From positions 62,001 through 126,000 of IMG/VR virus record IMGVR_UViG_3300032562_000003: DNA of 64,000 nt; one strand, written 5' to 3'. The translations under genes were made by a program, and so were the position numbers. Below, in pieces: positions 1 to 14,791 of the stretch. Under the pieces are notes generated by a model that was not told where the DNA came from, did no database searches, and saw only the letters and a list, made by a program, of their open reading frames with translations. Within the stretch, counting starts at the first letter, position 1; each line of letters opens with the position of its first letter.

Positions 1-666
1 GGCGGCTACATACAATGGAAGAATGTATCGATGGACCAGTCACAGCTTTTAAACTTCCTCTATAATGATCCATCAGGATTTATGGACATGATGGGTAGTG
101 AAATTGAAGCAGCAGACAAAAAGTTTAACAAGAAAGACAAGAAGACCAAACTAGTAATTCGTTGGCACGACGCAGGTGACTTCTTCTCTCCACAATATCT
201 TGCAATGGCATATTCACTAGCTAAAAAGTATCCTAAAGTAGACTTCTATGCTTACACAAAATTAGCATCGGTTGCTAAATCAGAAAAGCCTGATAACTTC
301 AAGATTAACTATTCAATGGGTGCAAAACCTTCTCAAGAAAAAGAAATCGATTTTGCTGTTACTAAAAACAGTAGAGTTGTTCCTCGTGAATTATTCACTG
401 ATCTTATTGCTAAAGACGGAGCAAAACTACTGAAGGACGCCAAAGGTCGTATGCAGTTCAAAACAAAACAGGATCTCAAGGCATTCAAAGAACGCCTTGC
501 TGCAAAATACAGTGTAGATCCAAAGTCAATACTAACATACGATGAAATGATGTCAACCCCAGTTAGTTCCGAAAAAAACAAGTACAACGTGATCGTCATG
601 CCGGGAGACGGTGACGACTCTGCAAACAGAAGTGACGTTCTAAACAGCTTCCTGCTAATGCACTAA
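1..666 (+). CDS. Gp88-like phage protein, 5'-truncated by the window edge
   Basis: Frame 1 is open from base 1 (GGYIQWKNVS-MDQ...). Motifs IRWHDAGDFF and FYAYTK are typical of the phage gp88-like family. Confidence 0.6.
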   Translation, partial: GGYIQWKNVSMDQSQLLNFLYNDPSGFMDMMGSEIEAADKKFNKKDKKTKLVIRWHDAGDFFSPQYLAMAYSLAKKYPKVDFYAYTKLASVAKSEKPDNFKINYSMGAKPSQEKEIDFAVTKNSRVVPRELFTDLIAKDGAKLLKDAKGRMQFKTKQDLKAFKERLAAKYSVDPKSILTYDEMMSTPVSSEKNKYNVIVMPGDGDDSANRSDVLNSFLLMH

Positions 667-2000
667 AATTCAAATAAATCTAGGCCCGATAGTTCTTTCT
701 TAGGTTCGAACATCGGGTCTTTTGTTAAGTATGTATCGTTATCCGTATAGATAACTCTGAACTTATGCTTATTGGTTAGAACAGACTTTATGTCATCGAT
801 GCAGATTATCTTTCTACCTAAATCTTTTATAAAATCAGCATACTTTACAGTGGTTTCATTGCATATCTTAGCAGTGCTATTGTTTGACTTCTTTTCAACA
901 AAGTTATTGATACAGTTACTCCAGCTGTGAAATACCGTTGATTCCATAGCTATAGCATTGGATAGTGATCCTACTTGATACCAATCATTTGCAGTAGGGT
1001 ACTTTTCATAAGCAACTATGATGTCATTAGCCATCGTTTTCTTATTGGTTTCAAAAAAGAATTTCTTGTTAAAGTTATTAGTCCATCGCTGATTTTCAAG
1101 CACAAATGTAGGTAATTGTATGTGCTGTTCATAAAAAGCCATGCCATAGCTTTCTACGGTGCTAGGATTAAATGCTATCCTAGACCCTGAAATGAAATCT
1201 ACTTTTTCTTGTCCTATGATCCCTACCTTAATTTCGTATTTGGCATTGATAGTTTTCAGACGATCTTCAAACTTCTTAGCGCCGGTGGCACTGGTCATGA
1301 TACGGGCCGGCAGTTTAACCTGATTTATCAATTCTATAAAAAGTTCGGGCTGTTTTCCGTCTTCCCATCTACCTACAAATAAAATACCCTCGCGAGGTCC
1401 GCTGTATTTTTCGAGCAATCCTTTTTCTGATATAGGAATAGGTAGATACTCTGCGTTAGAGAATGTCGATTGATTAAACCTACTTTGTGTTCCAATAGTA
1501 AGGCTATTCAACTGTAACTGCTCACGCATCATTTCATTGACACTGTCCAAAAAAGGATTTTTAGTATCTTTAAAAATCTGTGATTCTAGGTGAGTGTAAG
1601 CGATATTTTGAATACAATCAGATAATCCTAATGCGGCGGCAACTTGTATAGTTTCATAGGTGTTGCATACAAATGCGTCATAGATGTTAGTTGTTAATGC
1701 TTTAACGATTGCATCTCTAAAGTTAGCCATGCGTTCATAACAATAGCTATCTTCATACATAAAAATTGCACTGTGATCAGTGTATTGAAGCGGAACCTTA
1801 GGATAAATTACATTAACCTTAAGCTCTTTAACAAAATCTTCTGCAAGACCCTGTGGAACTTTATCTGTAATGATATCAACTTTTATGCCATGACTACTCA
1901 TCATTTCACAGAAACTCTTTGCGAATTGTCCAATTCCACCATGCGGAATTAGGGTCTGTGAACTAACCAAAAAGCCAATTCTGTGAGTATATAAGTTCAT
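663..2000 (-). CDS. GT-B (GT4-like) glycosyltransferase with C-terminal extension
   Basis: HGGIGQF N-terminal loop, ILFVGRWEDGKQPE, and PSTVESYGMAFYE (ExFG-type motif). Confidence 0.85.
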   Translation of the reverse strand: MNLYTHRIGFLVSSQTLIPHGGIGQFAKSFCEMMSSHGIKVDIITDKVPQGLAEDFVKELKVNVIYPKVPLQYTDHSAIFMYEDSYCYERMANFRDAIVKALTTNIYDAFVCNTYETIQVAAALGLSDCIQNIAYTHLESQIFKDTKNPFLDSVNEMMREQLQLNSLTIGTQSRFNQSTFSNAEYLPIPISEKGLLEKYSGPREGILFVGRWEDGKQPELFIELINQVKLPARIMTSATGAKKFEDRLKTINAKYEIKVGIIGQEKVDFISGSRIAFNPSTVESYGMAFYEQHIQLPTFVLENQRWTNNFNKKFFFETNKKTMANDIIVAYEKYPTANDWYQVGSLSNAIAMESTVFHSWSNCINNFVEKKSNNSTAKICNETTVKYADFIKDLGRKIICIDDIKSVLTNKHKFRVIYTDNDTYLTKDPMFEPKKELSGLDLFEF

Positions 2001-2230
2001 CTAGCAACCAACAATAGATGATAATCTTGAATCGTGTACCAACGATCTATCCTATAGGTAGTTCCTAATTCATTATATGTTAGTCTCTGCGATATTCTAT
2101 ATGCAGTTTTAAACCAAATCCAATCTCCGCTTTGACTGCACTTGTGTGGAAAGAAACAGAACATTAATCGAATTTCATCTGCACCCCTTATCCAAATTTG
2201 GTTAGCCTCTGTGTTGACCATATGCCACAT
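1997..2230 (-). CDS. Small hypothetical protein
   Basis: Fills the gap between queE and the GT and overlaps the GT start by 4 nt. True start uncertain. Confidence 0.6.
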   Translation of the reverse strand: MWHMVNTEANQIWIRGADEIRLMFCFFPHKCSQSGDWIWFKTAYRISQRLTYNELGTTYRIDRWYTIQDYHLLLVAR

Positions 2231-3112
2231 TTACGTTCCCCATTGGTTCTTCCAGAGCGTGACCTGCAATCTATCACTATAACGAAGCCCATGCTTCATT
2301 GCTGCTAGTGCCACGTTCTTGTTATTCAGTTGATACACACTTTCTACGCCACCAACTGGCATCAGATAAACATCACCCGTAAATCCAGCATCACGGTACA
2401 CTTGAGTCGTTTCTAAGGCCTCATCAATGTCATTTTCTGTAGCTACAACAAACTTTAGATACGTGTGTCCAACTTCCTCATAGCTGCATACGATATCGGG
2501 CTGAATCGCCTTCTCGCGTGCTTCGCCCGAGCAGCTTAGTTTGGCACTGACAGAAAACGTAATCTCACGATCCTTGTCATCTGAACCAAATCCTAACTTT
2601 CCACCTTCATACACCCAATCCTCTAGATAGTGTCTAAGTTCATGAGTAAGCGGCTGGGTGCCATTTGTCTCAAAGGTGATTTCTCGCAGACCCTTCATTT
2701 TGGGATGACTCAACAAAGACGGATATGATCGTTGCCACGTAAGCAATGGTTCTCCGCCAGTAATAACAAGATGCTCTCGCCTCCATTCATTGAACGGTAG
2801 TATTACCATAATGTCATCAACTATTTCATTGACCGTCTTGAATGGAGACAAGTCCTTGAAGCGAGGATCCCAGCTAGCATAACTGTCACACCCGGTGCTG
2901 ACTAATGGTAGAGATTCATAATTTTCATAAGGAGTATTCTTATGAGCGAAGGCGATAGCATCAACCTCGTCACTTAACTCACCTTTGGGCATTCCGAAAC
3001 CAGCACATTTGAAGTTACAGCCAAACGTGCGTAAAAATACCGACGGGACGCCTTGATATCTTCCCTCGCCTTGAATTGAGTAGAATAACTCACTGATCTT
3101 TATTTTTGTCAT
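2231..3112 (-). CDS. queE: 7-carboxy-7-deazaguanine synthase QueE (radical SAM)
   Basis: ISELFYSIQGEG, FLRTFGCNFKC...GCDS, VITGGEPLL, FETNGT, and C-terminal RYSDRLQV. Confidence 0.93.
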   Translation of the reverse strand: MTKIKISELFYSIQGEGRYQGVPSVFLRTFGCNFKCAGFGMPKGELSDEVDAIAFAHKNTPYENYESLPLVSTGCDSYASWDPRFKDLSPFKTVNEIVDDIMVILPFNEWRREHLVITGGEPLLTWQRSYPSLLSHPKMKGLREITFETNGTQPLTHELRHYLEDWVYEGGKLGFGSDDKDREITFSVSAKLSCSGEAREKAIQPDIVCSYEEVGHTYLKFVVATENDIDEALETTQVYRDAGFTGDVYLMPVGGVESVYQLNNKNVALAAMKHGLRYSDRLQVTLWKNQWGT

Positions 3113-3548
3113 TTTCTTCTTTCAAGTTATCATTTTCGGACTTATGCTGATTACTCGACAAGTATCGTATTAGTTCTTTGTCCGTTGGTTGAACCGCATA
3201 GTTATTTTTGAAAAATATTTCATAACTGTCGCTGCCGTATTTACCAATACCATAGAGCATTGTAGCATCATCATGATCCCAATTCAAATAATCTCGGGTC
3301 ATTCCAAGCAATCTTTTTACCCGAACATTAGTCATGCCTAAAGGAGAGACTACACGTTTGATATCGTCTTCGATAGCTAACAGCAACTTCTCAGGTGTAT
3401 CCCAACTCGTTAAAAACTCAGGTAATACTTTCTTTACTTGCTGCCTGGATGTTTGGTTCAACATGATTACTCCGACCATGTGTTGCCATGGTCCTTTTAT
3501 TTGCTGCTGCACCATCAAGTCGGCTCGCATTCTGTTAGATTTATCCAT
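3090..3548 (-). CDS. MBD4-like HhH-GPD DNA glycosylase
   Basis: VGVIMLNQTS and the HhH motif LYGIGKYGSDSY, matching the MBD4 glycosylase signature (LNxT...GIGKYxxDSY). Confidence 0.8.
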   Translation of the reverse strand: MDKSNRMRADLMVQQQIKGPWQHMVGVIMLNQTSRQQVKKVLPEFLTSWDTPEKLLLAIEDDIKRVVSPLGMTNVRVKRLLGMTRDYLNWDHDDATMLYGIGKYGSDSYEIFFKNNYAVQPTDKELIRYLSSNQHKSENDNLKEENDKNKDQ

Positions 3549-3705
3549 GCCAGTGTCTAATTGCGTTTTCGATAATAAAAATGTTGGTAATCACAGACTG
3601 GGTTATTAAGACTGTTCGAATCCAAGCGATCCGATCAGACTCTATATCACAAGGAGAAGCCTTTTCTCCTAAAGCCTTAGCCCATAATCCCCAAAGTTTA
3701 TTCAC
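3541..3705 (-). CDS. 54-aa small phage protein missed by the ORF track (MNKLWGLWAKALGEKASPCDIESDRIAWIRT...)
   Basis: Manual translation. The GTG start overlaps the queD stop, and the stop overlaps the glycosylase ATG, so it is coupled at both ends. Confidence 0.75.
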   Translation of the reverse strand: MNKLWGLWAKALGEKASPCDIESDRIAWIRTVLITQSVITNIFIIENAIRHWHG

Positions 3706-4211
3706 GCAAAAAGGTCCTCATTCCATTCACGGTGCCCTTCTCTGAATGCCATATTGCTTTGAGTCTCGCGCACTTCGACGCGATAGCACCACAGCCGGGC
3801 CGCCTCGGAAGGCCCCCACATTTCAGGAATATAAACTCCATTGACATACTTATAAAGCATGTCGGCTAAGCTTTCGCATCCCAATTTCGGGAGTATAGTT
3901 AACTTCATAAGACCACGCTTTTCTGCTTCTTTATACCAGTCAAGTTCCGGGTCATCAGAACTAACTAATGTGGTATGGTCAAATTGGTCTTCAAGTACCT
4001 TCTTTAGCTCCTTAAGACCGCCATAATCGGCGGCCCAATTACGAACGTCTAGCTCGTTAGTTCCAAAATAGAACTTCATAGAAAAGCTATATCCGTGAAT
4101 CAAATTGCAATGAGAATCTGCTCTCCATTGCCGATAAGCACAAGGAAACGCATCGTGGTATTCCTTTGTACTAGTATATGCATATGATACTGGTTGTAAT
4201 GTCATTTTCAT
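3702..4211 (-). CDS. queD: 6-carboxytetrahydropterin synthase QueD
   Basis: HCNLIHGYS, DQFDHTTLV, GCESLA and VEVRET motifs. Confidence 0.9.
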   Translation of the reverse strand: MKMTLQPVSYAYTSTKEYHDAFPCAYRQWRADSHCNLIHGYSFSMKFYFGTNELDVRNWAADYGGLKELKKVLEDQFDHTTLVSSDDPELDWYKEAEKRGLMKLTILPKLGCESLADMLYKYVNGVYIPEMWGPSEAARLWCYRVEVRETQSNMAFREGHREWNEDLFA

Positions 4212-4217
4212 TCTTTC

Positions 4218-4430
4218 TTACGTAAATCGTTCAACGGTTATGATACCGTAACGATACATTTTTGCTTCACAGCCAATTCTTTCTATGACTGCTTCTGCTA
4301 GCTTAATCATTTTTACACTGTTACCACACAGTATGGTAAGCGGAAACTCCTTCTGATTTAACAGAATGAAGTTTTCCACCATAACATCAACGTCTTGATG
4401 TCGTACACCATGTAAATCTAGATTTAGCAT
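4218..4430 (-). CDS. Small Smr-like domain protein
   Basis: N-terminal LDLHGV and the later ILCGNS resemble the Smr DLHG...ITG-G pattern. Confidence 0.55.
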   Translation of the reverse strand: MLNLDLHGVRHQDVDVMVENFILLNQKEFPLTILCGNSVKMIKLAEAVIERIGCEAKMYRYGIITVERFT

Positions 4431-5104
4431 TTTCCCATTCTTGCAATGCTTAGGAATTCATTTCTAGCAGCAGGGTCAGTCTTGAATCCACCACCTAAAC
4501 GAACAGTTACCGTTGAAGATCCGGTATCCTCAACACCACGCGATTTCACGCAATAGTGCTGTGCATCAATCATAACTGCAACATCCTCAGTATCTAGAAT
4601 AAATTGCAGAGTATGAAATACCTGTTCAGTCAGTCTCTCTTGAATTTGAGGACGCTTACTGAAGTATTCGACAATGCGATTGATCTTAGACAACCCAAGA
4701 ACCTTATCCTTAGGTACATATGCGACCGTCGCAACTCCATCGATGACCACAAAATGATGCTCACAGTTAGATTGAACGTTCACGTTTCGTTCTACTACCA
4801 TTTCGTTATATTTCATCTTATTCTCTACAGTCGTACACTTCGGGAATGCATCATAATCCAAACCCCAAAATATTTCGTTGCAGTACATTTTAGCAACCCG
4901 CTTTGGCGTTTCAGCCAAGCTGTCGTCTGTTAGATCAAGTCCTAACGTTTTCATAATATGTTCGAAATCTCGTTCGATGATTTCAATCTTGTCTTTACGG
5001 TCTAATCCGTTATCTTTAAACGGAGTTTCTACTCCGACTTTAACAAGATGTTCATGGACGCTACGACCCAGATCGGGGTCCGTTTTGGTTTTGTTGTATG
5101 ACAT
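4424..5104 (-). CDS. folE: GTP cyclohydrolase I
   Basis: ETPKRVAKMY, SNCEHH, GLSKINRIVEYFSKRPQIQERLT and HYCVKSRGV. Confidence 0.97.
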   Translation of the reverse strand: MSYNKTKTDPDLGRSVHEHLVKVGVETPFKDNGLDRKDKIEIIERDFEHIMKTLGLDLTDDSLAETPKRVAKMYCNEIFWGLDYDAFPKCTTVENKMKYNEMVVERNVNVQSNCEHHFVVIDGVATVAYVPKDKVLGLSKINRIVEYFSKRPQIQERLTEQVFHTLQFILDTEDVAVMIDAQHYCVKSRGVEDTGSSTVTVRLGGGFKTDPAARNEFLSIARMGKC

Positions 5105-5169
5105 AGTAAATCCTTCCTTACGCGGATGTCAATTTTGAGTGCGTCACCGTTGTGTGACACATGTATTTA
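5105..5169 (-). promoter_or_regulatory. folE leader: TAAATA promoter, two hairpins and SD
   Basis: Minus strand reads TAAATAC-at-GTGTCAC-acaacg-GTGACGC...ATCC-gcgtaaggaa-GGAT-ttact-ATG. Confidence 0.45.
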
Positions 5170-6342
5170 GTACTTTGATTCTCTTGTATATTTTCTATAA
5201 TCCGTACGATCACGATTCCACTTCTCCCCGTTTCCTTCAAGGATATCGCAAATACGATCCACAGTTTTATCGGTCCAATCACTGATCTTGCCCATATTTG
5301 CGTGTGGACGACGCAGCAAAGGATCTAGCTTGTTGATCGCATCTTGAATAGACCACGGAATGTACAAACGCTCAGGATCATTAGCAAAAGTTTCAGGAAA
5401 CGAACGATATGCGGGATACAGCACATTGCAACCCAATGCATCAGCCTCGCTTACAGTGTTGGATACCCAATCTTGTAATGCACAGTTGAAGACTACTCGG
5501 CTATCGTTAACAATCTCATAGTATTGATTCTTTTCCAAATCTTCATATAGCGTTAATTTTCGATCTTCGATCATCTTGCGAGTGCGTTGCATGTAGCTGT
5601 CATTGTTGCTTTTCAGCTTGCTGCCGCTACAAATAACGAATTCTACATTTTTGCTCGGATGTTGCTTGTGCCATTCATCGATCAAATCGAGATAGAAGTC
5701 AGGTTGCTTCTCCTGATCCCAGCGTGCAGAGAAAACAACTCGCATACGACGGTCATTGAACGGCTTGATACGTTCAACTCGACTTTGCACCTCATCCTTA
5801 CCAAAAGCAAGACCGGAAATATTATAGATGGGAGCAGTCCAACCAGCAATGGCCATGTGCGCAACCATTTCTTCATTGGTTGCAAGAACACCGTCGACAA
5901 ATTCGTTAACCATCTTCTCGTAATGCCCCATCCAGCGTTCCATTCCCCATACGTGAACAAAATCATCAGGGTCAATCGTTTGTGCTAGACAGCGAACATA
6001 TACTTTGGGTCTCATGTCATATGGAATCTGATCCATGATATACGGAAGAGACTCAATTCCCGGCTGAAACATATCTTCAAAGTAGATAACATCTTCTTGT
6101 GTGATCTTACCTTCCTTCATCAGCTTTACCAAATTCATCATCTGGCTCATACCGAAATAAGAACGACCATGTGCGTCTAGCACTTGACCAGTTACGATAG
6201 CCTTGCTGCTATCGAGCGTTTCGCCCGGCACCACTATGTAGTCGATGCCCCTACGATCAAAGACTCTAGTATTCCAGTATGTCAATTGGAGAGTGTACCG
6301 AGCCTTATAAGGCTCCAATCCCATATAGTATAGTTTACGCAT
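5167..6342 (-). CDS. GT-B glycosyltransferase (second)
   Basis: VVFSARWDQEKQPDF and NCALQDWVSNTVSEADALG. Confidence 0.82.
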   Translation of the reverse strand: MRKLYYMGLEPYKARYTLQLTYWNTRVFDRRGIDYIVVPGETLDSSKAIVTGQVLDAHGRSYFGMSQMMNLVKLMKEGKITQEDVIYFEDMFQPGIESLPYIMDQIPYDMRPKVYVRCLAQTIDPDDFVHVWGMERWMGHYEKMVNEFVDGVLATNEEMVAHMAIAGWTAPIYNISGLAFGKDEVQSRVERIKPFNDRRMRVVFSARWDQEKQPDFYLDLIDEWHKQHPSKNVEFVICSGSKLKSNNDSYMQRTRKMIEDRKLTLYEDLEKNQYYEIVNDSRVVFNCALQDWVSNTVSEADALGCNVLYPAYRSFPETFANDPERLYIPWSIQDAINKLDPLLRRPHANMGKISDWTDKTVDRICDILEGNGEKWNRDRTDYRKYTRESKY

Positions 6343-6355
6343 AATATTGTCCTAA

Positions 6356-6388
6356 TAAAAAGGTAACGGGTGGTTAACCACCCGTTAC
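6356..6388 (-). terminator. Rho-independent terminator
   Basis: Perfect 26-bp palindrome gtaacgggtggttaaccacccgttac (6363-6388) followed by a T-run on the minus strand. Confidence 0.75.
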
Positions 6389-6402
6389 TGTATGTCGATA
6401 CT

Positions 6403-6636
6403 TTATCGACGGGTATTAAGAAGTTCACGTTCCTTAAACTTCTCTGCATCGATTTCCCATTGATTCTTTGCAGGTTTGCTTGCAACTGTCTTTTGGTACT
6501 GCCGATAGATATAGCTCTTGTTGTTATATAAATCTCGCTCATCATATCGATAACCGTAGTCTCTACAGAAAATACGGTAGTTCTCCAAATCTTCAAAGAT
6601 TTGATTGACGATAGACTTATTGTCGAGCTTTGCCAT
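6403..6636 (-). CDS. Hypothetical protein, 77 aa (MAKLDNKSIVNQ...)
   Basis: SD TAAGGA lies before the ATG at 6636. The longer start at 6735 in the track is unlikely. Confidence 0.7.
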   Translation of the reverse strand: MAKLDNKSIVNQIFEDLENYRIFCRDYGYRYDERDLYNNKSYIYRQYQKTVASKPAKNQWEIDAEKFKERELLNTRR

Positions 6637-6646
6637 TTTTAGTTCC

Positions 6647-6742
6647 TTAGATGGTGAGTTGTTGAGATTGAGTAGTATTATAGAAAATCGTGGCACCGTT
6701 TTCACCGTCTTCTGAAACGGTAATTTCAATATCACGATTTGG
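6647..6742 (-). pseudogene. Orphan duplicate of the dpdL C-terminus
   Basis: Translates PNRDIEITVSEDGENGATIFYNTTQSQQLTI*, versus the dpdL end PNRYIQISVSEDGENGAELTFTTA*. Confidence 0.85.
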
Positions 6743-6817
6743 GTTAAAAATTTTATCTCATACTGGTCTCCTTTAAAGGTTTAGGCATAAATACAATGAT
6801 GAAAGAAAGATTGAACT

Positions 6818-7585
6818 ATGCCTAAACTTCAAGAGCAACATAATTATACTTGCGTATACTGCGGGAATCAAGCAAAATGGATAAGTGTAAATTCTAAGGT
6901 TTTCCGTTGTGTAGAAAAAATTACTCAATGTCCGGGCTTCATCGCAAAGGCAGAATCTTCTAGGAAAAAAAACATTACTCCTGAGGAAAGGAGAGTCCAC
7001 ATGAAGAAGATGAGTGAGGTTGGGAATAAGAAACTTCAGCAACTGCATACTGATCCTAACTGGGTAGAAGAAAAGGGTAAGAAAATTTCTGATGCTTTGC
7101 AGCAACGAGGTGGACATACCGGTGAACGCAATCCGATGTTCAATAAAAAACATACCTCTCATACTAAACAGATGCAATCATCGCGGGCATCAAACAGATC
7201 ACCTGAGTCATATCAAAAAGCTACACTGACAAAAATAGAACGTGGAATTTCTATACCGAAAGAACTCAAGACAGAATGGGAATTATATAGAGAGCAAGTC
7301 ACTAATTTCACTAATACTAGCTGGAAGTATGCAGAACATATTATTAATCCGAACAATCTAAAAAGAGGAAATGAATACGAACTAGATCACCGATTTAGCA
7401 TTACAGAGGGATTCAAACAAAGTATTCCACCTGAAATTATAGGCCATGCTGCCAATCTAGAACTGTTATTAAAAAGCGATAATAGATCAAAACGGACAAA
7501 ATGTTCCATCACTAAAGAAGAACTTTATGCTGTGGTAAAAGTTAGTTCTGCTCCATTTTCTCCGTCTTCACTCACTGATATTTGA
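6818..7585 (+). mobile_element. Free-standing HNH homing endonuclease (antisense)
   Basis: ELDHRFS...GHAANLELLLKSDNRSK, a NUMOD3-like NPMFNKKHT segment, an N-terminal CxxC, and its own TAAATA at 6788-6793. Confidence 0.85.
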
Positions 7586-7971
7586 ATATATCTGTTAGGA
7601 TATTTAGACGCAATAACTTCATATAAATCTTCTGCTATCATTTCGCAAGATTTATAATCTAATTGCAAAACGCCGTTACCGTATAAACTTTCCAACCAAC
7701 GCTTGAATTGTATAAATTCAATTGCTCGGTTAGAATGCTCTACCGCAATCGCCACCTTAAAATGAAAGATATGTCGGTGAGGATGTGCCAGAAAACTAAC
7801 GTCATATTCATCGCCAGTCTTAAGGTTGGGATCGTCTTCAGCAGCAGGATACCTATGAATGCCTTCGCGTTGAAAGGTCACCCACACTTTACGCTTTGCC
7901 CTTGCGGAGATTCTATTTCGTTGATCGGCTAGAGCCTGAATAGCTTGTTCGGGTAAATTATTAGTATTCAT
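7525..7971 (-). CDS. dpdL: QueD-paralog T-fold protein, DpdL-like (predicted CDG decarboxylase)
   Basis: FLAHPHRHIFHF fits LxxxHRHxF; also IEFIQFKRWL and SCEMIAEDL. Start reassigned to MNTNNL at 7971. Confidence 0.72.
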   Translation of the reverse strand: MNTNNLPEQAIQALADQRNRISARAKRKVWVTFQREGIHRYPAAEDDPNLKTGDEYDVSFLAHPHRHIFHFKVAIAVEHSNRAIEFIQFKRWLESLYGNGVLQLDYKSCEMIAEDLYEVIASKYPNRYIQISVSEDGENGAELTFTTA

Positions 7972-7978
7972 TATTTCT

Positions 7979-8173
7979 TCAGTAATCATTATATTCAATA
8001 ATATCAGACATTTGACGTTCTTGCAAGCGCTTAGCTGCCCGAAGTTCTTCAAAGGTATGTATACGTTGCATAGCCAGAATTTTTCGCACCGGCTCTTTTG
8101 TTTCATTGGCAATTTGTTCAGTTAGCAAATCCAGTTCGACTTGCAGAAGATTAATTTTGCTGGTCAAGTTCAT
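7979..8173 (-). CDS. Small coiled-coil hypothetical protein
   Basis: 64-aa ORF in operon order, with SD GGAG upstream. Confidence 0.65.
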   Translation of the reverse strand: MNLTSKINLLQVELDLLTEQIANETKEPVRKILAMQRIHTFEELRAAKRLQERQMSDIIEYNDY

Positions 8174-8239
8174 TTTTATACTCCACTGCTTAAGATTTAT
8201 TTTAACGTTTGTGTATATAATTTCAACCTATTTGGATAA

Positions 8240-9790
8240 CTATTCTAAAACTTCTAACATAGCGTCATCGCTATCTTCAACAACTTCTTCGATTTCAGGA
8301 TCAGGTTCTTCTATAGTAAAACACTCCTCAAACTTTGAAAGAGCATTTGTAGCCCTTTTTCCGGAAAACCCTTGTCCGGCCTTCATCTGCTGCCAGAATA
8401 GATTATATTGATCAATCATTGCAAGGCTTTTCTCACGATCCTTTAGAGAAAAAATCTTATCAATAAGATCACCGAATGTGGTACCATCAAACTTGTCCAA
8501 AACCATTTTAGGATTAATACCCGAGTCTGATTTACGATTGGCTTCTTGTACCGCATAAATGTGCCGATATACGTTATGTGCTTGCATCAATGTATAACTA
8601 AGAGTGTCCCAGCTGGTCTTCGTTTCTTTGCCGTGTTGCCCCAGAAAGCCTGGTCCTCTGTAACAGAGATCCTTAACCATCATTATATCAGTTACAGGGC
8701 TATCACTAAACACTTTATGGATGCCGTCTTCCAAAACCGCATCTTTGAACTTGCGAGTATCAGTCGCATAATTTTTGTTTTCAGCAGTTTTTTCCATCGA
8801 ATACGTCCACTTCGTGTTATGTCTAAACGTATTGTTGTTATACGCAAGCCCCTTTGCGGCCGCGTAGAATGGAGACGCACAATCAAACGTGATTTGCAAA
8901 TTTGGATTGTGATACTTGCGTATTGCTCTTTGAATATCGGTGAACAAAATAGCGTATTCTAGAATAGAAGTACCCAAACAGTGAATAAGATCATGTTTGC
9001 CTGGCTCAAGCAGACCATCATGAATGATGTTAACCATACGCTTTAGCATCAGATGCACGTCGATCTTTGTTTGACCACCAAACGCCCATCCGTTGAAATG
9101 ATTGTCTGGGTAAATATTAGGATCGCAATACTTCTTCATTTCTTCATACCAATCATCAGACTGTTTATGATTACGTCCTTGTAGAACGTTTAGAAACTTA
9201 CAACGGCCATCACGATTAGCAATGAAATACTCATTGTTAATATGAGTAGCAGCAATAGCGTCCTCAATGGTTCGAATGCCGTGCACGGACTTACCCGTTT
9301 TGGGGTCTTTGATATGATATGTAGTAAGCGACTGTGAAGGAATGTCGAGACACATACCGTAGTCCATGTACTCGTCCATCCACTTCAAAACCTCAGTGCG
9401 TTTCTTCATGGCCTTCGGGCAGTTAGGATCTTTCCAGTCAGCGGGCCATTGACACTTTAGAATTTGGAATCCACCAGAATCACCTAACATGAATGTATTT
9501 TTACGATCACGCTTACGAATGATGCTCTCATTGTGATCATTCTTCGTAATGTCTAGATTAGCGTGACCAGCTGAATACAGGCCCCACTTGTAAGTGTACA
9601 GTCCTTCTTTTTCGTTCAGAAAATTTAGCTTTTCAACATTACCGTTTAATCCAACAGGTATTCTAGCCGAATCAAAATAGTTTTCACCCTCACGTTGTTT
9701 ACCTAAACCAGCAATAAAAAATGACGATACTGCCGGCAGGAACAAAGCCCAGTCTGACTGGTGTGCGTTTGATAAGTTAATTTGTTCCAA
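8240..9790 (-). CDS. dpdA: DNA-guanine transglycosylase, DpdA2-like (TGT family)
   Basis: TGT motifs MLGDSGGFQI, CLDIP, LNVLQG, WAFGG, HCLGTS and TFDCASP, next to folE/queD/queE. Confidence 0.88.
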   Translation of the reverse strand: MEQINLSNAHQSDWALFLPAVSSFFIAGLGKQREGENYFDSARIPVGLNGNVEKLNFLNEKEGLYTYKWGLYSAGHANLDITKNDHNESIIRKRDRKNTFMLGDSGGFQILKCQWPADWKDPNCPKAMKKRTEVLKWMDEYMDYGMCLDIPSQSLTTYHIKDPKTGKSVHGIRTIEDAIAATHINNEYFIANRDGRCKFLNVLQGRNHKQSDDWYEEMKKYCDPNIYPDNHFNGWAFGGQTKIDVHLMLKRMVNIIHDGLLEPGKHDLIHCLGTSILEYAILFTDIQRAIRKYHNPNLQITFDCASPFYAAAKGLAYNNNTFRHNTKWTYSMEKTAENKNYATDTRKFKDAVLEDGIHKVFSDSPVTDIMMVKDLCYRGPGFLGQHGKETKTSWDTLSYTLMQAHNVYRHIYAVQEANRKSDSGINPKMVLDKFDGTTFGDLIDKIFSLKDREKSLAMIDQYNLFWQQMKAGQGFSGKRATNALSKFEECFTIEEPDPEIEEVVEDSDDAMLEVLE

Positions 9791-10145
9791 GTTTAGCTTC
9801 TTCTTTAATCAATATCTTAACGACTTCAATTTGTTTTTGTTTTTCTTTAATTTGATCAACCAGATCACGGATAGTAGCATTCGTTTCAGAAAGATTAAGC
9901 AGGTCTTTTTCTTCCTGCTGTTTATTTCTTGCCCAAGCTAAGATCGATACAACTTCCGGAGAAAGTTCCATGCTCGCAGTATTATTAATACCATACCAAG
10001 TAGAACCGTCATCTACTTCCAATGATTGGATGGTGCCGTTAAATCTTACCATGCCAGCACTCTGGTTGCTCATGTTGATGTAGGGTACCGAAGGCATCCC
10101 TCCATTAACAATAATTCCCTGTCCTCCGTAGATGCTCTTAATCAT
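9777..10145 (-). CDS. Hypothetical phage protein
   Basis: 122-aa ORF coupled to its neighbours, with a C-terminal coiled coil. Confidence 0.7.
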   Translation of the reverse strand: MIKSIYGGQGIIVNGGMPSVPYINMSNQSAGMVRFNGTIQSLEVDDGSTWYGINNTASMELSPEVVSILAWARNKQQEEKDLLNLSETNATIRDLVDQIKEKQKQIEVVKILIKEEAKLGTN

Positions 10146-10952: not shown

Positions 10953-12197
10953 TTAGCCGAAAGTAAACAACGAACTAAATGTACTATTAGTATTGGTGTC
11001 ATATCTGATTTTCCAATCTAACACACCTAACAGGTTGTCTATCTTTTCATCCACTAGTTTACGTTCCATATCAAGATCATCGAATGGTAGTTCTAGGAAC
11101 CATTTTGGAAGTCGTAATTCATCGGTGGGATATGCGATTGAAGTAATACCTAAGGGATTTGATTTTAGTGTACACACCACAACCTTCATGCCGTCGACAA
11201 TTTTTTGGCTGTACTGGTCGCTATTCATCTTACGCAGTTGATTGTAGTGAATGGCGGCCTTAGCATGACCAACACTGCACTTACCGGTTCTCTCATACTT
11301 AATGGTATGATTTGTCAAATTATTAACTGATTTAGGTGAACCCTTAGTCCAACTGTCTTGTTCTGAAAGCTTTCTTTTAAACTCTTTGATCTTTTCGATC
11401 ACTTCGTCTCGGCCCTTACCCTCTTGAATTACCATACAAAGAATTTCCATAAGAAATTCCTGAACGTACTTAGGTGTATCTGCACGCTTTAGGTCTAGAC
11501 CCATAGCTTTGATTTCACCTAATTTACCTTCCTTATCCTTGCGTTTACCTTCTTTGTCGAAGATGTTGATTGCGTAACGCTTCTTTGTAATAAAGATAGA
11601 ACGATCACCGATCAATTCTCTACCAGCTTTGATGACCTCACCGTTCTTGCGGGGACAATGGAACGCTTTCTCCATGAAAGCAGGAAAGCTAGCGTTAGTT
11701 TGCTCTGCGATGTTGTCGTACAGTTCGATGCAAACTTCCTTGTTCCATTCTATTTCACCTTGTTCGATTCTATCTTTTAATATAGAATATGCAGTGAAGT
11801 AGCAGGAGTCAGTATCACCGTAGATGATCGCCTCACCTTCGTGAGTGTATTCACCTGCAATGATTTCATTGATCTGGCTCATCATGTGCCTAACAATTTG
11901 ACGACCAGACAAAGTAACTGACTGTCCGATCCGCTTATCATAAAACCTGCAATATTCGTTCAAAATGGATCCATATGTAGAGTTCAAGAGAATTTTTTTT
12001 ACTAACTGTCGTTTGTCCCAATACTCCATTGCTAACCCCCAAACTGATTTATATGCTTCCATTGGATGAATGGAGCGGTCTCGTATTTCTAATCCGAAAC
12101 CAGTTATGTATTCAACAAGACCAATTTTGTCTTTGTTTTGAATAAAATCATTCACTTTATTAGTATCGTATTCCAATATAATTTTCGTTAGATTCAT
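10953..12197 (-). CDS. polB: DNA polymerase B, C-terminal subunit (motifs B and C)
   Basis: EYWDKRQLVKKILLNSTYGS, IIYGDTDSCY, KKRYA and KAMGLDLKRADTP. Confidence 0.93.
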   Translation of the reverse strand: MNLTKIILEYDTNKVNDFIQNKDKIGLVEYITGFGLEIRDRSIHPMEAYKSVWGLAMEYWDKRQLVKKILLNSTYGSILNEYCRFYDKRIGQSVTLSGRQIVRHMMSQINEIIAGEYTHEGEAIIYGDTDSCYFTAYSILKDRIEQGEIEWNKEVCIELYDNIAEQTNASFPAFMEKAFHCPRKNGEVIKAGRELIGDRSIFITKKRYAINIFDKEGKRKDKEGKLGEIKAMGLDLKRADTPKYVQEFLMEILCMVIQEGKGRDEVIEKIKEFKRKLSEQDSWTKGSPKSVNNLTNHTIKYERTGKCSVGHAKAAIHYNQLRKMNSDQYSQKIVDGMKVVVCTLKSNPLGITSIAYPTDELRLPKWFLELPFDDLDMERKLVDEKIDNLLGVLDWKIRYDTNTNSTFSSLFTFG

Positions 12198-12251
12198 ATT
12201 TTTGCTCTATAAGATAAATACATATGGTGCTTTTTTAAAGGAGAGTCGTAT

Positions 12252-13151
12252 ATGGTGGATTGTGCTATTTGTAACAAAGAAATGAAACGAGTGACTAGTA
12301 GTCATTTAAAAACTCACAATATAACTACGGCTGAATACTTAGCGCAATTTCCAGGATCTGTTTTATTTTCTGATGAGCTAAGGCATGCATACGGAAAACA
12401 CGCGAGAGATAACAACCCAATGCATGATCCAGTTAGTGTAGAAAAAGTAAGAAACGCATTAACTGGTAAACGAAAAACAGAGGAACATAAACAAAAATTA
12501 TCAACCGCACGAACCGGAGTATCTTGGGGAACCCACACACCTGAACATAAAGAATACATGAAGGTTGTCAGCAAGATTAATATGGAAGAGAGAATAGCCA
12601 ATGGATGGAAACAGAAACCGTGGACTGCGGAGAGAAGAGCCAAACAGTCTACTAAAATGATAGGAAATACCATTGGGTTAGGCGGCTCCGGAAATAAGGG
12701 TAAAAAGCTTGATCTATCAGATAACCAACGACGCAATAGGAGTAAAAAACGAGTAGAATTCATGTCTAAGAACGATACTCCTAAAAAACATACTTCTATT
12801 GAATTGTCGTTTATTGAATTTTGCAAGAATAATGATATATTGTACATTCATCAGCATCCTATACATACTGAAAAGGGTAGTTGGTTATTTGATTTCTTAT
12901 TACCAAATCTAAATTTACTAGTAGAAGTTGATGGTGAATATTGGCACACATCTAAAAGACAAATAAATCGAGATTTAATAAAAAATAACGTGGCATTGGC
13001 AAGCGGACATACAATATTGCGCTTATCAGACACTAACCTTGATTTCTCCTTTATCTTCGGCAGCAAGGATGCAATCATTTCGCATACTAATGGCATAATG
13101 GAAAGTAGGATTCAATCGGTAAAAAAATCATCAGGTAAAGATTTACCATAG
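12252..13151 (+). mobile_element. Antisense homing-type endonuclease (Vsr/DUF559-like PD-(D/E)XK, with zinc finger and NUMOD3-like repeats)
   Basis: CAIC...HLKTH, FDFLLPNLNLLVEVDGEYWH and RDLIKN. SD AAGGAG and TAAATA (12215-12220) lie upstream. Confidence 0.85.
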
Positions 13152-14791
13152 AGTATTTCTCTAACTGCGTATTGTTTTTTCTGAAGTTTTTTACGTTCAG
13201 TATACCACCGAGAAAGTAGTCCTGGAATCACTCCTTCTTTTTCGTAAGTAAAGATGGTACCATTTGCTGAAAGGATCCATGGTCTGTTACTGTCGAAGAT
13301 CATCTTCCAAATTTCAGCAGCAGACATTTGTACACTTCTACCATCTTCATAGTCTATCCAAAGGGTAGTTCCGCGTTCTTGATTCATGATTGCTGTATAC
13401 TCAATTGAGCCAAACAATCCTTCCCACAGAATTGCACCAATGACGCCTTCTTCCTCGCTGTCATCTCCGAACTTTTTCTTCTTCTTGTTCTTCTTTTCAG
13501 AAGCCAATCTCATGCTCTTTTCGTGCATGTATTGGTCAGTCAGTGTTTGACGAACTTGACCTATGATGGTTTCCGGAGACATGTTCAGCGCTCGAATGTC
13601 AGACGGATACAGAGAGTTGATGTCAACTGCACCAGGATATTCGTGCATTCCTTGTTTAGGAATAGCAACAAACGCACCAGCTGCCGGAAACCCAGTATCT
13701 TCTTTGGGCTTCTTGTTAGGTACGATCATTCCACGTGCGTGAGCTTCATTGAAGATAGCCATTTCGATCATCTGCACCGAACCCATAACTGTCGGAAGAA
13801 GTACGCTATTCTCGTGTGCTAGTGCGTTAGCAAGATCAAGGAACTTTAGCTTATTGTGAATTTTAACCATAAGCATCGTGTCTTGTCTGTTATACTCCAC
13901 GAACGTTTTAAAGTCCTGATTGTATAACTGATCCAAACTGCCTTCGTACTGAGTTTTACGTTCACCTACTTCCATCTCACCGATAGCATCAAGAGAATAA
14001 CTATGACGAGACTCGTAGTTGTACTTCTTATACAGTTGAAGGTAGTCCATATGAATTCTACCAACTAGATCGTATGTTTCTTCTTCCTTGCCGAAACGTT
14101 CATAGGTACGAGTCTTAGGGAGTTTCCCCAGCAGACAAAACTTACGAGTATCGTTTTTAGACATGATTCTAGTAACGCGATTAACCGTATACGGAATGTC
14201 GTATCCCTCTGAGTTCCAGCCAGTTAGAATGTCAGCATCTTCGATCAACTCAAAGAAGGTTTCAAACATCTCTATTTCAGAACGAAACAGAAAGCAGTTT
14301 GGAAAATCTTTAGTTAACTCTTGCGCAGTTTCATCTGTCATGTGCTTAGGTGGCATGACCAACGTAATCAGTTGATCAAGCCAATCTAGATACATTGAGA
14401 TTGCAGTTACTGGATTGAACGGATCACTAGTAGGACTAAATCCTCGCTCAGGATCAAAGTCCACTTCAATGTCGAAAAAGCAAGTATGAAGCTTTGGTGG
14501 TTCAGCATTAAGGTAGTTATCAGCCAAACACCTAAATACTACGTTAACGTCGCTCTCAAATAGTTTTTTGTTACTATGTATTCTGCGTTCCTTCTCGAAT
14601 TCGCTACGTTTACGAGTAGAGAACCGAGACAGCGGATCACCGTAAATAGAACGATACTTTCCTTTAGGATCAGCATAGTACATTACGTAGTTCGTAGGGA
14701 ACTCTTTGTATGCACGTTTACCTTCAGGAGTACGTTCTACAACGTGGATTCGATCTGCGTTGGAATCTAATACTGCATCGACATATGCCAT
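13112..14791 (-). CDS. polB: DNA polymerase B, N-terminal subunit (3'-5' exonuclease and motif A)
   Basis: FFDIEVD, TGWNSEGYDIPY, YNRQDT, AVDINSLYPS and GLLSRWYTERKK. Confidence 0.95.
   Translation of the reverse strand: MAYVDAVLDSNADRIHVVERTPEGKRAYKEFPTNYVMYYADPKGKYRSIYGDPLSRFSTRKRSEFEKERRIHSNKKLFESDVNVVFRCLADNYLNAEPPKLHTCFFDIEVDFDPERGFSPTSDPFNPVTAISMYLDWLDQLITLVMPPKHMTDETAQELTKDFPNCFLFRSEIEMFETFFELIEDADILTGWNSEGYDIPYTVNRVTRIMSKNDTRKFCLLGKLPKTRTYERFGKEEETYDLVGRIHMDYLQLYKKYNYESRHSYSLDAIGEMEVGERKTQYEGSLDQLYNQDFKTFVEYNRQDTMLMVKIHNKLKFLDLANALAHENSVLLPTVMGSVQMIEMAIFNEAHARGMIVPNKKPKEDTGFPAAGAFVAIPKQGMHEYPGAVDINSLYPSDIRALNMSPETIIGQVRQTLTDQYMHEKSMRLASEKKNKKKKKFGDDSEEEGVIGAILWEGLFGSIEYTAIMNQERGTTLWIDYEDGRSVQMSAAEIWKMIFDSNRPWILSANGTIFTYEKEGVIPGLLSRWYTERKKLQKKQYAVREILYGKSLPDDFFTD

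What the first reader, a model, noticed from the sequence alone, without database searches (positions are those of the whole stretch)
6647..7620. Antisense HNH endonuclease inserted in dpdL and supplied a replacement C-terminus; the old 3' end survives downstream
Seen: dpdL ends PNRYIQISVSEDGENGAELTFTTA*, overlapping the HNH stop by 61 nt. Beyond the HNH, 6742-6647 encodes PNRDIEITVSEDGENGATIFYNTTQSQQLTI*, whose TAA runs into the SD (TAAGGA) of the next gene. The two copies use different codons (ggt gaa aac ggt versus gga gaa aat gga). Established: some fungal mitochondrial endonucleases (for example in Allomyces atp6) carry a foreign 3' gene end. Inference: the same strategy operates here, in a phage DNA-modification gene. 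The ORF track misses this entirely.
Basis: partly seen in the sequence, partly recalled or inferred. Interest (0 to 1): 0.8.

Follow-up and report, generated by a model that had tools for sequence, protein, structure and literature searches.

The report
Homing endonuclease swapped a phage gene's end
A selfish nuclease gene sits backwards at the end of a lake phage's DNA-modification gene (dpdL), has brought its own replacement end for that gene and left the original end stranded downstream. This trick was known from fungal mitochondria; here it recurs across many related phages.

Summary

**What is in the window**
- dpdL (7971..7525, - strand) ends ...PNRYIQISVSEDGENGAELTFTTA*.
- An antisense 255-aa nuclease ORF (6818..7585) overlaps it by 61 nt.
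- A start-less second copy of the dpdL end (6744..6647) runs into the ribosome-binding site of the next gene.

**Comparative evidence from 171 related loci**
- 118 loci have no insert, and about 110 of them carry the downstream-type long tail joined directly to dpdL.
- The upstream-type short tail (xLTFxxx*) travels almost only with the 256-aa form of this nuclease.
- The stranded copy is closer than the in-frame copy to 100 of 102 distinct insert-free alleles.
- Nuclease presence is patchy on the tree of the neighbouring gene.
- One insert-bearing/insert-free pair is 99-100% identical on both sides, but only 65-75% identical across the last ~230 nt of dpdL. This is a co-conversion tract.
- The window's nearest relative carries an internally deleted copy of the nuclease.
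- Two other nuclease lineages made similar duplications, with nearly the same breakpoint.

**Limits**
- No intron signal was found.
- The arrangement is assembled identically in several lake metagenomes.
- The HNH label rests on motif and fold hints only; no Pfam HNH model matches.
- No cleavage or RNA data exist.

**Verdict:** a free-standing homing endonuclease with an Allomyces-atp6-like hybrid gene, i.e. a new variant of a known kind.

The parts
7525..7971 (-). dpdL hybrid gene (148 codons plus stop). It is a QueD-like T-fold protein proposed to be a CDG decarboxylase.
   Evidence: ORF and sequence. The signature LxxxHRHxF is present as LAHPHRHIF. It is 52% identical to the Acidovorax phage ACP17 protein and matches Cellulophaga phiST at E = 1e-8; both were named DpdL in PMC10516641. 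It matches PHROG 17812.
7525..7599 (-). In-frame replacement 3' end (PNRYIQISVSEDGENGAELTFTTA*). This is the duplicated, nuclease-linked copy. The imported tract probably extends further upstream, but that was not mapped in this genome.
   Evidence: It is closer to all 6 distinct nuclease-linked alleles than the stranded copy is. Identity to nuclease-bearing loci rises towards the 3' end of dpdL: 65, 75, 82, 79 and 48%, against 64.5, 68, 69, 74 and 18.5% for insert-free loci. pN/pS is about 0.1 against L089.
6818..7585 (+). Antisense free-standing nuclease ORF of 255 aa. It has an N-terminal Cys4 cluster, a NUMOD3 motif, and a C-terminal D-H...N...N beta-beta-alpha domain. Its last 12 residues are simply the antisense reading of the dpdL tail.
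   Evidence: NUMOD3 at E = 1e-4. 146 homologue clusters were found. D190, H191, N213 and N222 are invariant, and C12, C15, C31 and C38 nearly so. The model has pLDDT 87, but residues 244-255 fall below 50. The domain model has pLDDT 92 and its top Foldseek hits are Cas9 HNH domains, with E of 0.11 or higher.
6786..6817 (+). Conserved leader of the nuclease gene (CATAAATACAATGATGAAAGAAAGATTGAACT). The ATAAATA core resembles a T4-type late promoter; this is an inference.
   Evidence: It is conserved in every nuclease-bearing locus, in both the 256-aa and the 243/245-aa types, and is decayed in L104.
6647..6744 (-). Stranded native 3' end of dpdL ((N)PNRDIEITVSEDGENGATIFYNTTQSQQLTI*). It has no start codon and lies behind an in-frame stop.
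   Evidence: Translation. Homology to insert-free alleles starts 26 nt before the V codon. It is 83-89% nt identical to the best insert-free alleles and 72% on average, against 54% for the in-frame copy.
6745..6785 (.). Linker between the nuclease leader and the stranded copy. It is not shared with relatives and contains AGGAG followed by ATG AGA TAA.
   Evidence: Sequence. The linker differs in length and sequence in L089.
6403..6649 (-). Next gene (77 aa, unknown function), with its ribosome-binding site TAAGGA formed by the stop codon of the stranded copy.
   Evidence: ORF. Homologues follow dpdL directly in 118 compact loci, with a gap of about 10-45 nt. The same stop-plus-site arrangement is seen in the insert-free L031.

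Best explanation
A free-standing homing endonuclease gene, probably of the HNH type with a NUMOD3 DNA-binding motif, lives antisense at the dpdL/next-gene junction in a large group of lake phages.

It most likely works as follows. During co-infection the enzyme cuts nuclease-free genomes in the conserved 3' part of dpdL. The break is repaired from the nuclease-carrying genome. That repair copies in the nuclease gene together with the adjacent stretch of the donor's dpdL (co-conversion).

The donor's dpdL end differs at many synonymous and some non-synonymous positions, so the carrier genome is presumably not cut. The donor end is also complete, with the short tail typical of DpdL elsewhere, so the gene still makes a full-length protein.

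In the window's lineage, and in L089, repair seems to have been clean only on the upstream side. On the other side the recipient's own broken end, starting at the Y-P codons, was kept. The native 3' end therefore survives as an untranslated stub, whose last bases still provide the ribosome-binding site of the next gene.

Shown: the anatomy, the allele affinities, the patchy distribution, a mapped co-conversion tract in a relative pair, and a decayed copy in the nearest relative.

Inferred: the nuclease activity, the position of the cut, immunity of the hybrid allele, late expression, and one-sided repair.
For: - **Anatomy and duplication:**
- **Fixed site:** all sampled members of the nuclease family (146 clusters) sit at this same junction.
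- **Census of 171 loci:** 118 are compact, and about 110 carry the long tail. The xLTFxxx* tail occurs only with the 256-aa nuclease, apart from L104 and two lineages with a similar short tail.
- **Allele affinities:** the stranded copy is closer to 100 of 102 insert-free alleles, and the in-frame copy is closer to 6 of 6 nuclease-linked alleles.
- **Patchy distribution:** well-supported (starred) branches of the neighbouring glycosyltransferase tree force at least 6 gains or losses. Nuclease-bearing L096/L097 nest among the insert-free L022, L031 and L051.
- **Before/after pair L096 and L031:** they are 99-100% identical upstream and over dpdL nt 1-200, then 65-75% over nt 201-400. A 793-nt insert replaces 49 nt, and identity returns to 99% at the next gene.
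- **Gradient in the window:** identity to nuclease-bearing loci rises towards the 3' end of dpdL.
- **Decay stage:** the nearest relative, L104, keeps the short tail plus only the first ~28 and last ~20 codons of the nuclease.
- **Independent repeats:** the same duplication occurs with a GIY-like/PHROG 681 nuclease (L048/L050) and with a 198-aa HNH relative (L062). The breakpoints lie within 8 nt of each other.
- **Codon switches:** nuclease-linked alleles switch six-fold-degenerate codons, AGA against CGT in 92% of insert-free alleles.
- **No intron:** no intron or ribozyme signal was found.
- **Same assembly everywhere:**
Against: - No Pfam HNH model matches, and the structural matches to HNH domains are not significant (E of 0.11 or higher, TM 0.36 or lower).
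- No cleavage, homing or RNA data exist.
- No near-identical nuclease-free version of the window's own phage was found. The co-conversion tract is therefore mapped only in a relative pair and merely suggested by a gradient here.
- The window and L089 stubs differ mostly at synonymous sites (pS 0.56, pN 0.11, P = 0.0007). This is unexpected for an old pseudogene and needs either two independent captures or some selection on the stub.
- A similar short tail exists in two insert-free lineages (L157, L128), so the donor of the tail is not identified.
Confidence: 0.82

Rival explanations
1. Local tandem duplication of the dpdL 3' end within this lineage, followed by divergence. The nuclease later landed between the copies, and nothing foreign was imported.
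For: Two homologous copies in direct orientation flank the insert. The donor of the in-frame tail was not identified.
Against: The in-frame copy is only 67% nt identical to the stub, yet it groups with the tails of nuclease-bearing phages from different clades of the neighbouring-gene tree. The stub is 83-89% identical to insert-free alleles. The L096/L031 pair shows direct import of a diverged 230-nt tract together with the nuclease. The nuclease ORF itself extends 61 nt into the in-frame tail, so the two are physically one unit.
Confidence: 0.05
2. The insert is an intron-like or otherwise processed element. The mature dpdL message or protein joins the body to the downstream copy, and the in-frame short tail is not the functional end.
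For: The stub is intact over 32 codons. Its divergence from the L089 stub looks selected. Phage genes do host group I introns with nuclease ORFs (general knowledge; PMC2988022).
Against: An Rfam scan at permissive E-values found no intron or ribozyme family in 6300-8300. The nuclease is on the opposite strand. The in-frame tail is complete, conserved among carriers and under purifying selection. Five of seven carrier lineages retain only 6-10 codons of the old end, and L089's stub is frameshifted at its end, so joining to it cannot be the general mechanism. Short tails are normal for DpdL in other phages.
Confidence: 0.03
3. The stub is kept because it is useful, not merely left over. It might carry the ribosome-binding site and perhaps a promoter for the next gene. 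It might also serve as a spare part, so that recombination between the two copies removes the nuclease cleanly and restores the native gene.
For: Every carrier locus keeps at least the last 6-10 codons plus the TAAGGA-type site in front of the next gene. A -35/-10-like pair (GTGAAA, 17 nt, TATAAT) lies inside the stub at 6705..6677. Divergence between the two long stubs is biased towards synonymous sites.
Against: Promoter-like sites are no more frequent than in shuffled sequence (7 found, 6.3 expected). Most carriers have lost the part containing TATAAT. The two copies share only short runs of identity, which makes recombination between them inefficient. This rival is compatible with the main explanation rather than opposed to it.
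Confidence: 0.1

Closest known systems
Mobile endonuclease ORFs (mORFs) that create hybrid genes with a duplicated C-terminus in fungal mitochondria. Examples are Allomyces macrogynus atp6 (Paquin, Laforest and Lang 1994); Rhizopus atp9; Mortierella cox2; and Glomus atp6, atp9, cox2 and nad3 (PMC3630166).
   Same: An endonuclease ORF arrives together with a foreign, in-phase replacement 3' end of the host gene. The native 3' end stays downstream. The native copy is more like the gene of element-free relatives than the inserted copy is (for the literature, for this case).
   Different: The host is a phage, not an organelle. The nuclease is on the opposite strand and overlaps the new tail by 61 nt, rather than being fused in phase. 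The nuclease family is putative HNH with NUMOD3. Here the same locus shows the whole series from empty site to decayed element, with three nuclease lineages.
Free-standing homing endonucleases of T4-type phages ('intronless homing': SegB, SegF, SegG, MobE; reviewed in PMC2988022, with PMC2790892 and PMC2330249).
   Same: The nuclease gene lies between or beside conserved genes. It is spread by cutting nuclease-free genomes, with co-conversion of flanking markers. Its distribution is patchy. ORFs overlapping neighbours are common.
   Different: The review does not mention target-gene duplications (no occurrence of 'duplicat'). Here a piece of the target gene is duplicated and the old end is left as a stub. 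Activity is not shown here.
Homing-endonuclease insertion that splits a gene but leaves it functional (Aeromonas phage Aeh1 nrdA split by mobE; Friedrich et al. 2007; PMC3045599).
   Same: A nuclease gene sits inside a phage metabolic gene, and the gene product stays functional through a workaround.
   Different: In Aeh1 the two gene pieces are both translated and assemble. Here the gene is made whole by an imported end, and the old piece is not translated.
Nuclease genes at the boundaries of exchanged segments in ICP1 phages (PMC10448857).
   Same: Nuclease genes mark the borders of mosaic, recombined segments between related phages.
   Different: That work describes exchange boundaries. It does not describe a duplicated gene end with a stranded native copy. 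I did not read it in detail.

Membership tests
Free-standing homing endonuclease gene (phage intronless homing) | Present or absent at one fixed genomic site, in a pattern that disagrees with the phylogeny of flanking genes | tested here: met
   All sampled homologues sit at the dpdL/next-gene junction. Well-supported (starred) branches of the glycosyltransferase tree force at least 6 gains or losses.
Free-standing homing endonuclease gene (phage intronless homing) | Empty-site allele in a close relative, with a tract of diverged flanking sequence next to the insert (co-conversion) | tested here: met
   This was met for the element family. L096 and L031 are 99-100% identical outside the tract and 65-75% identical over dpdL nt 201-400. 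For the window itself only a gradient is seen, and no near-identical empty-site strain was found.
Free-standing homing endonuclease gene (phage intronless homing) | Not embedded in a self-splicing intron or intein | tested here: met
   No Rfam family matched at E up to 1 in 6300-8300. The ORF is antisense to the host gene.
Free-standing homing endonuclease gene (phage intronless homing) | The enzyme cleaves the nuclease-free allele and spares its own genome | not testable with these tools
   Indirect evidence only: many codon differences in the carrier allele, including AGA against CGT and AGT against TCN.
HNH (beta-beta-alpha-metal) nuclease superfamily | Match to a curated HNH profile | tested here: not met
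   Pfam matched only NUMOD3, in the window protein and in 28 of 33 homologues. A PDB profile search found nothing.
HNH (beta-beta-alpha-metal) nuclease superfamily | Conserved His/Asn catalytic motif on a strand-strand-helix unit | tested here: met
   D190-H191, N213 and N222 are invariant in 33 sequences. The model places them on E187-191, E214-218 and H219-225.
HNH (beta-beta-alpha-metal) nuclease superfamily | Significant structural similarity to a solved HNH domain | tested here: inconclusive
   The top 8 Foldseek hits of the domain model are Cas9 HNH domains, but E is 0.11 to 1 and TM is 0.36 or lower. Atlas leads to PF01844 clusters score 0.88-0.89.
mORF-type hybrid gene with duplicated C-terminus (Allomyces atp6 type) | Inserted C-terminus in phase with the gene, native C-terminus retained downstream, and native copy closer to element-free relatives | tested here: met
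   The feature is defined in the literature in PMC3630166.
mORF-type hybrid gene with duplicated C-terminus (Allomyces atp6 type) | Endonuclease ORF on the same strand, often in phase with the host gene, in a mitochondrial genome | tested here: not met
   The ORF is antisense with a 61-nt overlap. The host is a lake phage, with contigs up to 259 kb in IMG/VR.
DpdL (proposed 7-carboxy-7-deazaguanine decarboxylase) | QueD-like protein with LxxxHRHxF in place of CxxxHGH, homologous to the phiST and ACP17 proteins | tested here: met
   The motif is present as LAHPHRHIF. ACP17 is 52% identical at E = 1e-35, and phiST matches at E = 1e-8. The definition is in PMC10516641.
DpdL (proposed 7-carboxy-7-deazaguanine decarboxylase) | Gene neighbourhood with DpdA, FolE, QueD and QueE, and without QueC | tested here: inconclusive
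   FolE and QueD are clear. A radical-SAM protein scores below the cut-off. The 516-aa neighbour has the DSGGFQ motif but no profile hit. QueC was not seen in 1-10000, and the rest of the window was not scanned.
DpdL (proposed 7-carboxy-7-deazaguanine decarboxylase) | Decarboxylase activity | not testable with these tools
   The activity is also unproven in the literature. Heterologous expression gave no dDG, the proposed 7-deazaguanine DNA modification.

The most novel reading that the evidence does not exclude
The Y-P codon position of dpdL may be a shared cleavage hot spot used by at least three unrelated nuclease lineages. On this reading, the long stubs are molecular scars of independent one-sided repair events that mark the cut site to within a few bases. 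The stubs may also be retained under selection, for instance as a spare end that allows clean loss of the nuclease or switching between two DpdL C-termini. If the short and long tails change DpdL function, selfish nucleases would be driving diversification of an anti-restriction DNA-modification pathway.
Probability: 0.2. Interest if true: 0.65.

Novelty: new variant of a known kind. Interest (0 to 1): 0.5.

Why it matters
- **A natural series at one locus.** In uncultured lake phages, one gene junction shows nearly every stage of a homing endonuclease's life. The stages are the empty site, a simple intergenic insert, an insert that overwrites and replaces the gene's end, long and short leftovers of the old end, and an internally deleted nuclease.
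- **Wider reach of a known trick.** The 'bring your own gene end' solution described for fungal mitochondria also operates in phages, and in a gene of the 7-deazaguanine DNA-modification pathway that protects phage DNA from restriction.
- **Practical consequences.** Gene callers miss the stub and mis-start the nuclease. dpdL trees will be misled by imported 3' halves. The coinciding breakpoints give a concrete, testable prediction of where the enzymes cut.

Tried and rejected
- **Phage record searches.** Megablast of the locus and of 24 kb of the window against 50,697 phage records found nothing.
- **Search for an empty-site strain.** A near-identical nuclease-free strain was sought in several ways. 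The metagenome scan with the neighbouring glycosyltransferase gave 86% identity at best. Contigs of four runs showed no joint skipping the insert. An exact 38-mer of the stub in IMG/VR returned only five copies of the same phage, all with the insert.
- **Intron or ribozyme.** The Rfam scan was negative.
- **Nuclease family.** Pfam, PHROGs, and PDB sequence and profile searches did not name the catalytic family. Whole-protein Foldseek was uninformative, and the domain model gave only sub-significant HNH hits.
- **Trees of dpdL halves.** They were too short to resolve clades, with few starred branches, so I relied on identity gradients and on the L096/L031 pair.
- **Promoter and terminator scan.** It was no better than shuffled sequence for promoters.
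- **Neighbouring 516-aa gene.** Pairwise comparison with an annotated queuine tRNA-ribosyltransferase of phage BUDD was not significant (E = 0.065).
- **Literature.** Searches found no phage case of a nuclease-linked C-terminal duplication. This covers a limited search of the held library only.
Full report
**What is in the window**

On the - strand the genes run as follows:
- a 516-aa DpdA-like gene (9790..8240, with a DSGGFQ motif);
- a 64-aa gene;
- dpdL (7971..7525);
- a 77-aa gene (6636..6403);
- a glycosyltransferase (6342..5167);
- folE, a 70-aa gene and queD.

dpdL ends ...KYPNRYIQISVSEDGENGAELTFTTA*. A + strand ORF of 255 aa (6818..7585) overlaps that end by 61 nt.

Beyond the ORF's start, the - strand reads TGA-DKIFN-PNRDIEITVSEDGENGATIFYNTTQSQQLTI-TAA (6760..6647). 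The TAA forms TAAGGA in front of the ATG of the 77-aa gene.

The two copies of PNR..ENGA share 14 of 17 residues but only 34 of 51 nt. Their differences include two six-fold codon switches, AGA/CGT and AGT/TCA. No other place in the window resembles the 17-mer.

**Is it real DNA?**

Positions 5200-8200 are assembled without a single difference in contigs of four lake-water or freshwater runs from three studies, at depths 19-91. Five IMG/VR contigs, up to 259 kb long, carry the same arrangement at 99.7-100% identity. It is not an assembly chimera.

**Identity of the genes**

The host gene carries the DpdL signature LxxxHRHxF. It is homologous to the ACP17 and phiST proteins for which the name DpdL was coined. 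Its decarboxylase activity is proposed, not proven.

The antisense ORF has these features:
- four nearly invariant N-terminal cysteines;
- a NUMOD3 motif, which Pfam describes as a motif of homing endonucleases;
- a C-terminal domain with invariant D-H, N and N on a predicted strand-strand-helix unit.

No HNH profile matches it. Foldseek puts Cas9 HNH domains on top, but without significance. I therefore call it a putative HNH-type nuclease.

Its last 12 residues (APFSPSSLTDI) are the antisense reading of dpdL's VSEDGENGA. They are absent from the 240-249-aa family members and are modelled as disordered. They look like read-through, not a functional part.

**Comparative census**

IMG/VR and metagenome scans gave 171 loci with dpdL.
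- In 118 loci, dpdL is followed within a few tens of bases by the 77-aa gene homologue.
- About 110 of these end ...ENGATIYYNTTKPYQQLAI* or a close variant, which is the downstream type.
- The 8-residue tail xLTFxxx* occurs with the 256-aa nuclease (window, L089, L012, L090-L098), in L104, and in a similar form in two insert-free loci with a divergent next gene (L157, L128).

Quantitatively, the stub is closer than the in-frame copy to 100 of 102 distinct insert-free long-tail alleles (72.3% against 53.8% nt). Its best matches are 83-89% identical. The in-frame copy is closer to all six distinct nuclease-linked alleles (69.9% against 59.1%).

**The nuclease is a site-specific mobile element**

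A protein search found 146 clusters. Every context I fetched has the gene antisense between dpdL and the next gene.

In the 243-aa type (L102/L103), dpdL keeps its full long tail and the overlap is 11 nt. That is a plain intergenic insert.

On a tree of the neighbouring glycosyltransferase, carriers are scattered, and well-supported (starred) branches force at least 6 changes. L096/L097 nest inside a 100%-supported clade with the insert-free L022, L031 and L051.

L096 and L031 form a before/after pair:
- they are 99-100% identical for about 1.5 kb upstream and over the first 200 nt of dpdL;
- they are 65-75% identical from codon ~67 to the end;
- 793 nt in L096 replace 49 nt in L031;
- identity returns to 99% from the start of the next gene.

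That is a co-conversion tract. It shows that the element imports about half of dpdL, not just a tail.

In the window, identity to other carriers rises along dpdL (65, 75, 82, 79 and 48%). Identity to insert-free loci stays flat and then collapses in the tail (64.5, 68, 69, 74 and 18.5%).

**Life-cycle stages**

The window's nearest relative is L104. Its glycosyltransferase is 86% identical, and the two are sisters with 98% support. L104 has the short tail but only the first ~28 and last ~20 codons of the nuclease, plus a decayed leader.

Most carriers retain only the last 6-10 codons of the old tail in front of the ribosome-binding site. Examples are TIFKQQLAI* in L098 and FYNNIAI* in L012. 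Only the window and L089, whose nuclease is 79% identical, keep a long stub, and L089's is frameshifted at its end.

**Recurrence and breakpoints**

The duplication also occurs in two other settings:
- with an unrelated antisense nuclease in L048/L050 (PHROG 681 'endonuclease', with a GIY-like motif by eye);
- with a 198-aa relative of the HNH in L062.

Homology of the four stubs to insert-free alleles begins 26, 27, 27 and 19 nt before the V codon of VSEDGENG, which is at the Y-P codons.

I infer that this marks the position of the break. The upstream end invaded the donor and copied the donor's dpdL end plus the nuclease. The downstream end was kept and joined without homology.

This would also explain why the stub is tolerated: it would hold only half of a recognition site spanning the break. 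None of this is shown.

**An unexplained point**

The window and L089 stubs differ mainly at synonymous sites (pS 0.56, pN 0.11, P = 0.0007 against neutrality).

The simplest reading is that two already diverged insert-free genomes were invaded separately, each leaving its own end at the same breakpoint. The different linkers next to the stubs fit this. Selection on the stub cannot be excluded.

**Rivals**

- **Purely local duplication.** This is contradicted by the allele affinities and by the L096/L031 tract.
- **Splicing to the stub.** This is contradicted by the missing intron signal, the antisense nuclease, the conserved complete short tail, and the loss of the stub in most carriers. Short tails are the norm for DpdL in distant phages, so the imported end should be functional.

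**Comparison with what is known**

The logic matches the mitochondrial mORF hybrids (Allomyces atp6; Glomus atp6, atp9, cox2 and nad3). It also matches intronless homing of T4 seg and mob genes.

What differs:
- the phage setting;
- the antisense overlap;
- the putative HNH/NUMOD3 enzyme;
- three nuclease lineages converging on one breakpoint;
- a complete series of stages at one locus.

I found no phage report of such a duplication in limited searches.

**Verdict**

It is of moderate interest: it would not surprise a homing-endonuclease specialist, but it is a clean and testable natural system.

Noticed in passing
window 10953..14791: The family-B DNA polymerase is in two ORFs on the - strand: 14791..13112 (559 aa, exonuclease domain plus the start of the polymerase domain) and 12197..10953 (414 aa, the rest of the polymerase domain). 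They are separated by an antisense 299-aa ORF (12252..13151) that overlaps the first piece by 40 nt. That ORF has weak, sub-threshold hits to PvuRts1I-like_N and DUF559 nuclease families. A relative (L094) has an unsplit 905-aa polymerase. This is probably a second mobile nuclease in the same window.
   Followed up: partly
L104:2940-3200 (dpdL orientation): The window's nearest relative has an internally deleted nuclease. The N-terminal MPKLSSPNINNTCFLCGSQAFYVSVNSK* and the C-terminal ..ITLEKLYEATGAPNVNNAPFSPSSLISI* remain within 162 nt between a short-tailed dpdL and the next gene.
   Followed up: yes
L048:3875-4819, L050 (same sequence): A different antisense nuclease (PHROG 681) also ends in the antisense reading of the dpdL tail (..PFSPSSLTSI*). 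It leaves a long stub, YPSRSIEISVSEDNENGATIQYNLTYPSQSIVI*. The upstream extension of its ORF reads ..SQCEMISND.. on the strand opposite to dpdL, close to where dpdL would read CEMISDD. I do not know whether this is chance or a small inversion.
   Followed up: partly
many relatives, between the 77-aa gene homologue and the glycosyltransferase (e.g. L010, L016, L023, L098, L036): A second variable site: about 760 nt or more of extra DNA lies there in many loci. It includes a DUF723 ORF in L098 and a distant relative of the HNH ORF in L036. The window has no insert there, only a strong terminator-like hairpin at 6388..6363.
   Followed up: no
L039, L040, L065/L066/L072, L110, L140, L152, L171, L178: Other inserts of 0.2-1.5 kb lie between an intact long-tailed dpdL and the next gene. 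They are unrelated to the two nucleases used as queries. Their content was not examined.
   Followed up: no
window 6818..7585: The protein collection holds the window's nuclease as a 194-aa product (P0002), starting at Met62. The 61 residues upstream include the nearly invariant Cys4 cluster, so the 255-aa ORF is the likely gene.
   Followed up: partly
window 6677..6705 (- strand): A -35/-10-like pair (GTGAAA, 17 nt, TATAAT) lies inside the stub. The TATAAT comes from the YNTT codons, which are conserved in insert-free long tails. It could be an internal promoter for the next gene or mere chance, since the scan found no excess over shuffles.
   Followed up: no
window 4218..4430 (- strand): A 70-aa ORF between folE and queD begins MLNLDLHGVRH.. 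By memory only, the LDLHG stretch recalls the Smr nicking-nuclease domain. Pfam gave no hit at E = 0.01.
   Followed up: no
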